The notes under the pieces are model-generated. The model had not been told where the DNA came from. It did not search any database and was given only the letters and a program-made list of their open reading frames with translations. A stretch of 63,850 bases of DNA, filler included, from Octopus bimaculoides (taxonomy: Eukaryota): the NCBI RefSeq assembly GCF_001194135.2. It is 9 parts of 8 records of this genome, joined end to end, with 100 filler letters (N's around TTAATTAATTAA, not from the genome) between each part and the next. Parts side by side here need not be neighbours in the genome. Positions count along the whole stretch, not along the records: positions 57,774 to 59,910 come from NC_068991.1; 8 more parts are not named here. One strand, given 5' to 3'. Shown here piece after piece: positions 57,774 to 59,910 of this stretch. Each line of letters opens with the position of its first letter. Positions within the stretch are counted from its first letter, which is position 1. A program made the translations under genes and the position numbers.

Positions 57774-58056
57774 TCCGTTACTTTCCGATAGTTTCCGTTA
57801 TTTTCAGTTGCTTTTCGTTACATTCCGTTGGTATCCATTACTTTCCCTTAGTTTCCGTTAGTTTCCGTTAGTTTGCGTTAGTTTCCGTTAGTTTCCGTTA
57901 CTTTCCGTTACTTTCCGATAGTTTCCGTTATTTTCAGTTGCTTTTCGTTACATTCCGTTGGTATCCATTACTTTCCCTTAGTTTCCGTTAGTTTCCGTTA
58001 TTCCCGTTAGTTTCCGTTAGTTTCCGTTAGATTCCGTTATTTTCCGTGACTTTCCA
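57774..58056. repeat. 10-bp minisatellite (GTTTCCGTTA) with a 130-bp higher-order duplication
   Basis: The variant series ctttccgata-gtttccgtta-ttttcagttg-cttttcgtta-cattccgttg-gtatccatta-ctttccctta repeats exactly at 57781 and 57911. Confidence 0.92.
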
Positions 58057-59910
58057 TTCGGGCCAACCGCAACGAACGAAGTTCCGTAGCTCTTGGCTCG
58101 AAGGAACGTACGTACGTTAGGGCGAAGACCAACGAACGAGGTTCCGTAGCTCTTGGCACAGACGAACGTACGTACGTTCGGGCGATGAGAAACGAACAAA
58201 GTTCCGTAGCTCTTCGCTCGAACGAATGTACGTTCGTTCGGGCGAAGAGCAACGAACGAAGTTCCGTAGTTCTTCTCTCGAACGAACGTACATACGTTAG
58301 GGCCAAGAGCAACGAACGAAGATCCTTAGCTCTAGTCTCGAACGAACGGACGTACGTTCGGGCCAAGAGCAACGAACGAAGTTCCGTAGCTCTTGGCTNN
58401 NNNNNNNNNNNNNNNNNNNNNNNNNNNNNNNNNNNNNNNNNNNNNNNNNNNNNNNNNNNNNNNNNNNNNNNNNNNNNNNNNNNNNNNNNNNNNNNNNNCT
58501 CTAGGCTCGAACGAACGTACGTACGTTCGGGCCAAGAGCAACGAACGAGGTTCCGTAGCACTAGGCTCGAACGAACGTACGCACGTTCGGGCCAAGAGCA
58601 ACGAACGAAGCTCCGTAGCCCGAGACTCGAACGAACATCCGTACGTTCAGGCGAAGTGCAACAAAAAAAGTTGTGTAGCTCGTGACTTGTACGTATGTAC
58701 GTACGTTCGGGCCAAGAGCAACGAACGAATCTCCGTAGCCCTAGACTCGATCGAACGTCCGTACGTTCAGGCGAAGTGCAACAAACAAAGTTGTGTAGCA
58801 CTTGACTTGTACGTACGTACGTACGTTCGGGCCAAGAATAACGAACGAAGTTCCGTAGATCTTGGCTCATGCGAACGTACGTACATTCAGGCCAACTGCA
58901 ACGAACGAAGTTCCGTAGGCCTTGGTTCGAACGAACGTACGTACGTTCAGTTTAAGCGCTACTAACGAAGTTCCTTAGCTCTTGGCACGAATGAACGTAC
59001 GTTCGGGCCGAGCGCAACGAACGAAGTTCCGTAGCTCTTGGTTCGAACAAACGTACCTACGTTCAGGCCAAATGCAACGAACGAAGTTTCCTAGCTCGTC
59101 GCTCGAACGAAATTACGTACGTTCGGGCTAAGAGCAATGAACGGAGTTCCTTTTTCTCTTGGCTCGAACGAACGTACGTACTTTCGGACCAAGTGCAACG
59201 AACGAAGCTCCGTAGCTGTTGCCTCGAACGAACGTAAGTACGTTCGGGTCGAGTGCAACGAATGAATTTCCGTAGCTCTTGGCTAGAACGAACGTACGTA
59301 CGTTCGGGCCAAGAGCAACGAACAAATTTCCTTTGCTCTTGGCTCGAACGAACATAGGTACGTTCGAGCCAAGTGCAACGACGAAATACCGTAGCTTCGG
59401 GCCAAGTGCAACGAACGACGTTCCGTTGCTCTAGGCTCGAACGAACGTACGTACATTCGGGCCAAGAGCAACGAACGAAGTTCCGTAGCTCTTGGCTCCA
59501 ACGAACGTATGTACGTTCGGGTCAAGAGCAACGAACGAAATTCCGTAGCACTTGGCTCCAACGAACGTACGTAAGTTCGGTCTAAGAGCAACGAACGAAG
59601 TTCCGTAGCTCTTGGCTACGACGAACGTACGTACTTTCGGGCCAAAAGCAACGAACGAATCTCCGCATCGCTTGGCTCGAACGAACGTACGTACATTCGG
59701 TCCAAGAGCAACGAACAATGTTCCGTAGCTCTTTGCTCGAACGTACGTACATGCGTTGGTGCCAATTGCAACAAACGAAGTTCCGTAGCTCTTGGCTCGA
59801 ACAAACCTACGTACGTTAGGGCCAAGAGCAACGAACGAAGTTCCGTAGCACTAGGCTCGAACGAACGTACGTACGTTCGGTCCAAGTACAACGAACGAAG
59901 TTCCGTTGCA
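58057..59910. repeat. CpG-rich 60-bp tandem satellite, ~30 units
   Basis: Consensus by eye: AACGAACGAAGTTCCGTAGCTCTTGGCTCGAACGAACGTACGTACGTTCGGGCCAAGAGC. Period 60; truncated by the spacer at 59911. Confidence 0.95.

What the first reader, a model, noticed from the sequence alone, without database searches (positions are those of the whole stretch)
58057..59910. CpG-rich 60-bp satellite built from two hairpins, with reciprocal arm variants
Seen: each unit holds a ~42-bp imperfect palindrome (GCTCTTGGC-TCGAAC-GAACGTACGTACGTTC-GG-GCCAAGAGC) and a small AAC-GAA-GTT hairpin of the stable C(GAA)G type. There are 9 CpG per 60 bp in an AT-rich genome. The unit at 58209-58250 changes both arms together (GCTCTTCGC/GCGAAGAGC). 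GCACTTGGC left arms and GCCAAGTGC right arms also both occur. A local 120-bp dimer repeats at 58621/58741. Established: dyad symmetry and cruciform potential are proposed features of some centromeric satellites. Inference: the structure is maintained by selection or arm-to-arm conversion, and retained CpGs suggest low methylation or a young array.
Basis: partly seen in the sequence, partly recalled or inferred. Interest (0 to 1): 0.7.

Follow-up and report, generated by a model that had tools for sequence, protein, structure and literature searches.

The report
Palindromic CpG-rich 60-bp satellite DNA
This is an ordinary non-coding satellite repeat whose 60-bp unit is nearly its own reverse complement, but about two thirds of the copies have lost the strong predicted hairpin by mutation, and nothing shows that it is being preserved.

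Summary
Positions 58057-59910 carry about 29 head-to-tail copies of a 60-bp unit, interrupted by a 100-N gap. A separate 10-bp satellite lies at 57774-58055. The consensus unit has 9 CpG and folds into a 42-nt hairpin (-18 kcal/mol, z -8.3) plus a GAA-loop mini-hairpin. The whole unit matches its own reverse complement at 46 of 60 positions.

The main inference fails. Paired columns pair no more often than when partners are shuffled among units (82.8% against 83.1%). Double changes are at chance level (4 against 4.5). The unit at 58209 is a real compensated case, but a best unit that good arises in 31% of column shuffles. The 9-bp arms are the most variable part of the unit (15% against 8%). 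Only 10 of 28 units still fold clearly better than shuffles.

"Low methylation" fits the data: CpG sites change no faster than other G/C sites. "Young array" does not fit: units are only 81% alike.

No frame stays open, there is no Rfam family or tRNA, and nothing matched in bacterial, viral, metagenome, phage, plasmid, protein or literature searches. The source organism, copy number and chromosomal location remain unknown. I read it as a new member of a known kind and of low interest.

The parts
57774..58055 (.). Neighbouring 10-bp satellite (TCCGTTAGTT, about 28 copies, 49% T on the + strand). It abuts the 60-bp array and runs to the left edge of the piece.
   Evidence: TRF period 10, 28.3 copies, 78% matches. 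Composition. An exact 97-nt copy recurs 130 nt apart. Not significantly related to the 60-mer (P = 0.28).
58057..58398 (.). 60-bp satellite, left block: 5.7 units, ending at unit position 10 at the gap.
   Evidence: TRF period 60, 84% matches. Unit table.
58399..58498 (.). Assembly gap (100 N) inside the array. Its length is a placeholder.
   Evidence: The phase requires 51 + 60n nt. The flanking units are 95% alike.
58499..59910 (.). 60-bp satellite, right block: about 23.5 units, running to the right edge of the piece.
   Evidence: TRF period 60. Unit table. Alignment A1.
59275..59316 (.). Well-kept 42-bp dyad. Left arm GCTCTTGGC at 59275-59283, perfect 18-bp palindrome CGAACGTACGTACGTTCG at 59289-59306, right arm GCCAAGAGC at 59308-59316.
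   Evidence: Exact motif positions. The unit folds at -17.4 kcal/mol, z -6.1. Consensus fold.
59471..59486 (.). Mini-hairpin ACGAAC-GAA-GTT(C)CGT in a consensus-like unit (unit positions 44-59). The GAA loop is closed by C.G.
   Evidence: Consensus fold. Pairs 44/59 to 49/53 form in 88.7% of cells.
58209..58250 (.). G>C at 58215 pairs with C>G at 58244, and A>T at unit position 26 (58234) closes a consensus mismatch. This is the best hairpin in the piece.
   Evidence: variants. (-23.6 kcal/mol, z -7.6). (19 of 21 Watson-Crick pairs; P(max >= 19) = 0.31 under column shuffling).
58618..58857 (.). Local 120-bp higher-order dimer (A-B-A-B units).
   Evidence: The two dimers are 91% identical, against a background of 81%. 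There is no array-wide dependence of identity on lag.
59335..59427 (.). 93-bp fused unit. A deletion of about 26 nt removes the left arm and most of the core of the second unit.
   Evidence: Unit table. TRF period 93.

Best explanation
This is non-coding satellite DNA, most likely from a eukaryotic chromosome, next to an unrelated 10-bp satellite.

The founder 60-bp unit had two parts. One was a self-complementary tetranucleotide run (CGAA CGAA CGTA CGTA CGTT CG). The other was a 9-bp inverted repeat bracketing that run. As a result the unit is nearly its own reverse complement, in effect two inverted 30-bp halves.

The unit was amplified head to tail, and copies then drifted. Point mutations hit the stems as freely as anywhere else, so the dyad is an inherited property of the founder that is decaying, not a structure kept by selection or by arm-to-arm correction.

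Consensus-like copies can still form strong hairpins on single strands, or cruciforms under torsional stress. The most likely effect of that is on the array itself: slippage, unit-scale duplications and deletions, and trouble for assemblers.

CpGs persist because they are not preferentially lost, which points to little or no germline CpG methylation at this locus.

Shown: the tandem structure, the dyad, the decay, the absence of covariation, the CpG rates, and the absence of coding or known RNA. Inferred: eukaryotic origin, the mode of amplification, hairpin formation in vivo, and low methylation.
For: - Tandem 60-bp units, 89.5% identical to the consensus and 81% identical pairwise.
- The consensus hairpins are far better than shuffles (z -8.3, -5.5 and -5.7). 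A dimer folds into one long hairpin (-53 kcal/mol, z -13).
- The unit matches its own reverse complement at 46 of 60 positions. Shuffles average 26.6, with a maximum of 38 in 5000.
- Stretches of 100-148 nt are 70-75% self-complementary across the array.
- There is a 4-nt sub-period (28 of 60 matches, z 4.0). A 4-nt deletion unit and a (GTAC)4 variant fit slippage.
- No covariation appears in three structure tests and two permutation tests.
- The shuffle standard deviation is 0.5 points. By my estimate, an excess of about 1.5 points in paired cells would have been visible.
- The arms are the most variable segment.
- Real units fold at a mean of -11.0 kcal/mol, against -20.7 for the consensus and -7.1 for shuffles. 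Only 10 of 28 have z < -2.
- CpG sites are not hypermutable.
- No frame stays open, and five frames are about equally stop-poor.
- No tRNA was found. Rfam gave only sub-threshold generic miRNA-hairpin hits on both strands.
- Nothing matched in GTDB genomes, metagenomes, IMG/VR, phages, plasmids or the protein collection.
Against: - Only 29 units from one short scaffold were available. Short-read contigs of satellites can be chimeric, and they favour diverged array edges over the homogeneous bulk.
- Counts are cells, not independent mutation events.
- The consensus dyad is very strong and could still matter at the level of the array.
- Unit 58209 carries three symmetry-restoring changes, so an occasional template-switch event cannot be excluded.
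- The core and the segment at positions 43-60 are about twice as conserved as the arms. That could reflect a constraint I have not identified, such as a binding site.
- Organism, copy number and location are unknown.
Confidence: 0.7

Rival explanations
1. The dyad is functional. The repeat is a centromeric or pericentromeric satellite whose hairpins or cruciforms help specify centromeric chromatin. Symmetry is kept at the level of the array by homogenisation towards a symmetric master copy, not by pair-by-pair compensation.
For: - The dyad in the consensus is very strong and the unit is strand-symmetric.
- Dyad symmetries are reported as enriched in many centromeric satellites (PMC5889037).
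- Tribolium (peri)centromeric satellites show dyads at several scales (PMC13081366).
- The units beside the assembly gap are the most consensus-like, so the unassembled bulk may be more symmetric.
Against: - No covariation was found.
- The arms are the most variable segment.
- About two thirds of units have lost a clearly better-than-shuffle fold.
- There are no data on location or on CenH3.
Confidence: 0.12
2. The piece is part of a transposon rather than a free satellite. One option is the long terminal inverted repeat of a foldback-type element, which is built of tandem sub-repeats. Another is a satellite seeded by such an element.
For: - Two tandem arrays of different period (10 bp and 60 bp) lie directly side by side.
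- Foldback elements carry internal tandem repeats in their terminal repeats and can seed satellites (Tetris / TIR-220, PMC4079207).
Against: - The 10-mer and the 60-mer are not detectably related.
- No transposon end, body or second inverted copy lies within the piece.
- Both edges of the piece fall inside repeats.
Confidence: 0.08
3. It is a repeat block with a regulatory or replication role outside classical heterochromatin. Examples are rDNA spacer sub-repeats, or a region like the palindrome-bearing 'homologous regions' of large insect DNA viruses, possibly endogenised.
For: From general knowledge rather than a test here: sub-repeats of about 60 bp are common in rDNA spacers, and baculovirus homologous regions are ~60-70-bp repeats around a ~30-bp imperfect palindrome. 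The unit architecture here resembles that.
Against: - No rRNA or other Rfam family lies in the piece.
- No match in IMG/VR to three diagnostic 18-22-mers.
- Thirty diverged copies beside a 10-bp satellite are unlike what I recall of viral homologous regions.
Confidence: 0.05
4. It is contaminant, symbiont or artefactual DNA: bacterial, phage or plasmid sequence, or a mis-assembled chimera.
For: The piece is an isolated 2.1-kb scaffold with an internal gap, and both of its ends lie in repeats.
Against: - No hit in 185,579 species' genomes, in metagenomes (only one lone 21-mer in L001, with no repeat around it), in phages or in plasmids.
- There are no unique spacers, so it is not CRISPR-like.
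- It has no coding capacity.
Confidence: 0.03

Closest known systems
Dyad-symmetry-rich centromeric satellites (Kasinathan & Henikoff 2018, PMC5889037)
   Same: Tandem satellite whose units hold inverted repeats predicted to form hairpins or cruciforms well beyond what shuffled sequence gives.
   Different: That work concerns short (<10-bp) dyads in satellites known to be centromeric. Here the dyad spans 42 of 60 bp, location is unknown, and the copies show no sign that the dyad is being preserved.
Tenebrionid beetle satellites built of inversely oriented subunits (Tribolium madens TmSat2, T. brevicornis; PMC13081366)
   Same: The monomer is in effect two inverted halves, so the repeat unit is itself one large dyad.
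   Different: Those monomers are hundreds of bp long (a ~600-bp dyad in a 704-bp unit) and also form kilobase-scale inverted sub-arrays. Here the unit is 60 bp, all units point the same way, and no sequence relationship to them was tested or found.
Tandem repeats inside foldback-transposon terminal repeats (Tetris TIR-220, PMC4079207)
   Same: Adjacent tandem arrays, and a documented route from such repeats to satellites.
   Different: No element ends or inverted partner are visible. TIR-220 is 220 bp and AT-rich, whereas this unit is 60 bp and 51-53% G+C.
GNA-loop DNA mini-hairpins, d(GCGAAGC) type (PMC13037366, PMC3201870)
   Same: The small hairpin has a GAA loop closed by a C.G pair (C49-GAA-G53).
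   Different: The stem continues with A.T pairs rather than G.C. Stability in this context is predicted, not measured.

Membership tests
Satellite DNA | Many head-to-tail copies of one unit | tested here: met
   About 29 units of 60 bp.
Satellite DNA | Non-coding | tested here: met
   No frame is open across the array, and units of 56, 61 and 93 bp break any frame. No protein relatives.
Satellite DNA | High genomic copy number, long arrays, heterochromatic location | not testable with these tools
   No reads or chromosome-scale context. The array runs off the piece at 59910 and contains a gap.
Centromeric dyad-symmetry satellites | Dyad symmetry enriched over composition-matched shuffles | tested here: met
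   z -8.3 (42-mer) and -13.3 (dimer), 0 of 200 shuffles as good.
Centromeric dyad-symmetry satellites | Association with CenH3 / centromere position | not testable with these tools
   No chromatin or mapping data.
   82.8% against 83.1% shuffled. Double changes 4 against 4.5.
Satellites with inversely oriented subunits | Unit composed of two halves in opposite orientation | tested here: met
   46 of 60 identity to its own reverse complement, against a maximum of 38 in 5000 shuffles.
Foldback-transposon terminal repeat | Sub-repeat arrays related to each other, and a second inverted copy of the block | tested here: inconclusive
   The 10-mer and 60-mer are unrelated. An inverted partner cannot be sought without the genome.
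CRISPR array | Conserved repeats separated by unique spacers | tested here: not met
   All 60 positions are conserved between units, and there are no unique spacers.
Known structured RNA / miRNA / tRNA | Score at or above the Rfam gathering threshold, or an ARAGORN call | tested here: not met
   Best hit 31.9 bits against a threshold of 99. Hits fall on both strands and on many miRNA models. No tRNAs.
rDNA spacer sub-repeats | Linkage to rRNA genes | tested here: inconclusive
   No rRNA in the 2.1-kb piece. Flanks are unavailable.

The most novel reading that the evidence does not exclude
The repeat may be a strand-symmetric satellite. Any few units can fold back on themselves, and the two strands read almost alike. 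That could let it act through structure, in one of two ways. It could mark centromeric chromatin through array-scale hairpins or cruciforms. Or it could yield self-pairing hairpin transcripts from either strand that feed small-RNA heterochromatin silencing. In either case symmetry would be kept by homogenisation of the unassembled bulk of the array, not by the diverged copies seen here.
Probability: 0.1. Interest if true: 0.55.

Novelty: new member of a known kind. Interest (0 to 1): 0.25.

Why it matters
If the dyad were actively maintained, this compact unit would be a convenient test case for the idea that centromeric satellites are selected for non-B DNA. The copies available argue against that, because the hairpin decays like neutral sequence. 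What remains useful is a clean example of how a self-complementary tetranucleotide run plus a short inverted repeat can produce a satellite unit that is almost its own reverse complement. The array also hints, through CpG sites that mutate no faster than other G/C sites, that its host methylates this DNA little or not at all.

Tried and rejected
- **Protein-coding 20-residue repeat.** The consensus has a stop in only one frame, but no frame stays open and several frames are equally open. Indel units break any frame. Rejected.
- **CRISPR or bacterial palindromic-unit cluster.** There are no unique spacers and no hit in GTDB genomes. Rejected.
- **tRNA, structured RNA or miRNA cluster.** Only sub-threshold generic hairpin hits. 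Rejected.
- **Contaminant, phage or plasmid.** No matches. The single metagenome hit, L001, shares one 21-mer with no repeat around it and is a chance match.
- **Finding the source organism through predicted proteins of public assemblies.** A 300-residue query of all five open consensus frames gave nothing. Two window ORFs are not on record.
- **Finding the consensus in papers.** Seven diagnostic strings on both strands gave no paper.
- **Common origin of the 10-mer and the 60-mer.** The best local score is ordinary (P = 0.28).
- **Array-wide higher-order repeat.** Identity does not depend on lag. Only one local dimer exists.
- **Population-level reciprocity of variant types.** Not significant.
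- **'Best unit' test for 58209.** Not exceptional.
- **Z-DNA potential of CGTACGTACG.** One literature search gave no usable support, and I did not pursue it.

Full report
**What is there**

The piece spans 57774-59910 and holds two tandem arrays.
- Positions 57774-58055 carry about 28 copies of a 10-bp unit, TCCGTTAGTT. This array is 49% T on the + strand.
- Positions 58057-59910 carry a 60-bp repeat, interrupted by 100 N at 58399-58498.

A wrap-around alignment resolves 28 units of at least 50 nt plus fragments. MAFFT gives the same consensus: GCTCTTGGCTCGAACGAACGTACGTACGTTCGGGCCAAGAGCAACGAACGAAGTTCCGTA. Units are on average 89.5% identical to the consensus and 81% identical to each other.

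**The gap**

The left flank stops at unit position 10 and the right flank resumes at position 2, on the same strand and in the same family. A true length of 100 nt would resume at position 51. So the N run is a placeholder, and an unbroken array needs 51 + 60n nt. The units bordering the gap are among the most consensus-like in the piece (95-97%) and are 95% alike. That is what one expects if the assembler failed in a more homogeneous stretch. Nothing below relies on continuity across the gap.

**The dyad is real, and larger than described**
- The consensus 42-mer folds as single-stranded DNA at -18 kcal/mol. Shuffles give -5.5 +/- 1.5 (z -8.3).
- The 60-mer adds a hairpin with a GAA loop closed by C.G, which is the GNA-loop type (PMC3201870, PMC13037366).
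- The right arm of one unit and the left arm of the next form a second dyad around that small hairpin (-12.5 kcal/mol, z -5.7).
- A dimer folds into one continuous hairpin (-53 kcal/mol, z -13.3) (all folds).

The underlying reason is that the unit is nearly its own reverse complement. It matches at 46 of 60 positions in the best rotation. Shuffles average 26.6, with a maximum of 38 in 5000. Stretches of 100-148 nt are 70-75% complementary to other stretches of the same strand.

The core is a degenerate tetranucleotide run, CGAA CGAA CGTA CGTA CGTT CG. At lag 4 the consensus matches itself at 28 of 60 positions (z 4.0). Such a run is self-complementary by construction, so part of the palindrome follows from microsatellite-like ancestry.

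**Is the structure maintained?**

No, as far as these copies can show.
- With the fold register on alignment A1, 82.8% of cells form a standard pair, against 83.1 +/- 0.5% when 3' partners are shuffled among units.
- Cells with changes on both sides number 4, against 4.5 expected.
- The dyad across unit borders gives 81.2% against 81.1%, and 5 against 4.0.
- My own Watson-Crick-only permutations give 73.6% against 73.7% for the arms (P = 0.53). Double changes are 2 against 2.8 within units and 4 against 3.0 between neighbours.

The shuffle standard deviation is only 0.5 points. By my estimate, even a modest excess of about 1.5 points would have shown.

Unit 58209 has G7>C with C36>G, and in addition A26>T closes a consensus mismatch. 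It is the best hairpin in the piece (-23.6 kcal/mol). But C36>G is shared with the two preceding units, which lack the partner change, and G7>C recurs in the next unit, which lacks C36>G. A best unit with at least 19 of 21 Watson-Crick pairs arises in 31% of column shuffles.

T3>A occurs in 5 units and A40>T in 10. They coincide in the same dyad no more often than the frequency of A40>T predicts. T6>A, in 7 units, has no reciprocal at all. A statistic for reciprocity of variant types over all pairs is 119, against 97 expected (P = 0.13-0.17). Because the two arms are the same sequence in opposite orientation, the same context-dependent mutation would create 'reciprocal' variants without any conversion.

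The arms are in fact the most variable part of the unit: 15.0% of cells changed, against 8.3% elsewhere (position-level Mann-Whitney P = 0.04). Real units fold at -11.0 kcal/mol on average, against -20.7 for the consensus and -7.1 for their shuffles. Only 10 of 28 reach z < -2.

**CpG**

The consensus has 9 CpG. The copies average 7.5 per 60 bp, and CpG observed/expected is 1.9.
- CpG positions differ from the consensus in 11.1% of cells, and other G/C positions in 12.4%.
- Transitions are 6.5% against 5.0% (Fisher P = 0.34).

There is therefore no methylation-type decay. That fits low germline methylation of this DNA, which is an inference. With 19% divergence between units, 'young array' does not describe this stretch.

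**What it is not**
- No reading frame stays open. Five frames are stop-poor simply because the consensus contains one TAG and no TAA or TGA. Units of 56, 61 and 93 bp shift any frame.
- No tRNA was found.
- Rfam gave only sub-threshold matches to assorted miRNA-precursor models on both strands, that is, generic hairpins.
- There are no unique spacers, so it is not CRISPR-like.
- Diagnostic 18-22-mers are absent from GTDB species genomes and from IMG/VR. In the metagenome set they hit only one contig (L001), which shares a lone 21-mer with no repeat and is a chance hit.
- blastn found nothing in phages or plasmids.
- A query of all five open consensus frames found no predicted protein in the large protein collection, and two window ORFs are not on record.
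- No paper prints the sequence.

The source organism, copy number and chromosomal position therefore remain unknown.

**How it most likely works**

My best reading (about 0.7) is a non-coding satellite that is most likely eukaryotic.

A founder unit was made of a self-complementary tetranucleotide run bracketed by a 9-bp inverted repeat. It was amplified head to tail. The amplification process left these marks:
- a local 120-bp dimer duplication (58618-58857, 91% identity);
- a 4-nt core deletion (58978);
- a (GAAC)2 to (GTAC)2 change shared by two units;
- a 26-nt deletion that fuses two units (59335-59427).

Copies then diverge without regard to pairing. Hairpin formation by consensus-like copies on single strands probably promotes slippage and instability. 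That is an inference from established behaviour of palindromic DNA, not something shown here.

**Rivals**
- A structurally functional centromeric repeat, kept symmetric by homogenisation of the unassembled bulk (0.12).
- Part of, or seeded by, a foldback-type transposon whose terminal repeats consist of tandem sub-repeats (0.08; PMC4079207). The 10-mer and the 60-mer are unrelated, however.
- rDNA-spacer sub-repeats or viral homologous-region-like repeats (0.05).
- A contaminant or artefact (0.03).

**Comparison with what is known**

It works like the dyad-rich satellites surveyed by Kasinathan and Henikoff (PMC5889037). In architecture it resembles beetle satellites built of inversely oriented subunits (PMC13081366), but on a much smaller scale and with all units in one orientation. 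Membership of any named sequence family was not established. I file it as a new member of a known kind.

**Caveats**

The sample is 29 units from one short scaffold. Short-read satellite contigs may be chimeric, and they over-represent diverged copies. Counts are cells rather than independent events.

Noticed in passing
window 57774-58055: A separate 10-bp satellite (TCCGTTAGTT, strongly T-rich on the + strand, CpG observed/expected 2.1) abuts the 60-bp array. Positions 57774-57870 recur exactly (97 of 97) at 57904-58000, a 130-bp higher-order copy. It is not significantly related to the 60-mer.
   Followed up: partly
window 58050-58062: The two satellites join directly at ...CTTTCCATTC|GGGCCAACC..., with no unique sequence between them. 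The last 10-mer ends in ATTC where the 60-mer has GTTC.
   Followed up: no
window 58678-58737 and 58798-58857: Three joint changes (unit positions 11, 13, 17) turn (GAAC)2(GTAC)2 into a (GTAC)4 run. TRF reports (GTAC)4.5 at 58809-58826. This looks like one slippage or copying event that was later duplicated along with the 120-bp dimer.
   Followed up: partly
window 58978-59033: A 56-bp unit has lost 4 nt at unit positions 9-13 (alignment dependent). This is consistent with the 4-nt sub-period of the core.
   Followed up: partly
window 59335-59427: A deletion of about 26 nt fuses two units into a 93-bp unit lacking one left arm and most of one core. It explains the 93-, 153- and 213-bp periods that TRF reports.
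   Followed up: partly
window 58618-58677 and 58738-58797: In these two units the small hairpin is remodelled (G46>A with C57>T, plus C56>G), giving GCAAC...GTTGT. It is a single compensated change, shared because the dimer was duplicated.
   Followed up: partly
window 58057-59910: At CpG sites, G>A changes outnumber C>T on the + strand by 24 to 10 cells (binomial P = 0.024). Cells are not independent events, so this strand asymmetry is only a hint.
   Followed up: no
window 58057-59910, unit positions 18, 29, 30, 44, 47, 48, 55: The most invariant columns are all A or T, within the AACG / CGTT motifs. Segment 43-60 and the core are about half as variable as the arms. This could be an unidentified constraint such as a binding site, or an uneven mutation rate.
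   Followed up: no
L001 1232-1252 (JAAUYM010042765.1): The only public hit to any diagnostic string. It is a lone 21-mer in a non-repetitive 2.2-kb metagenome contig and is judged a chance match.
   Followed up: yes
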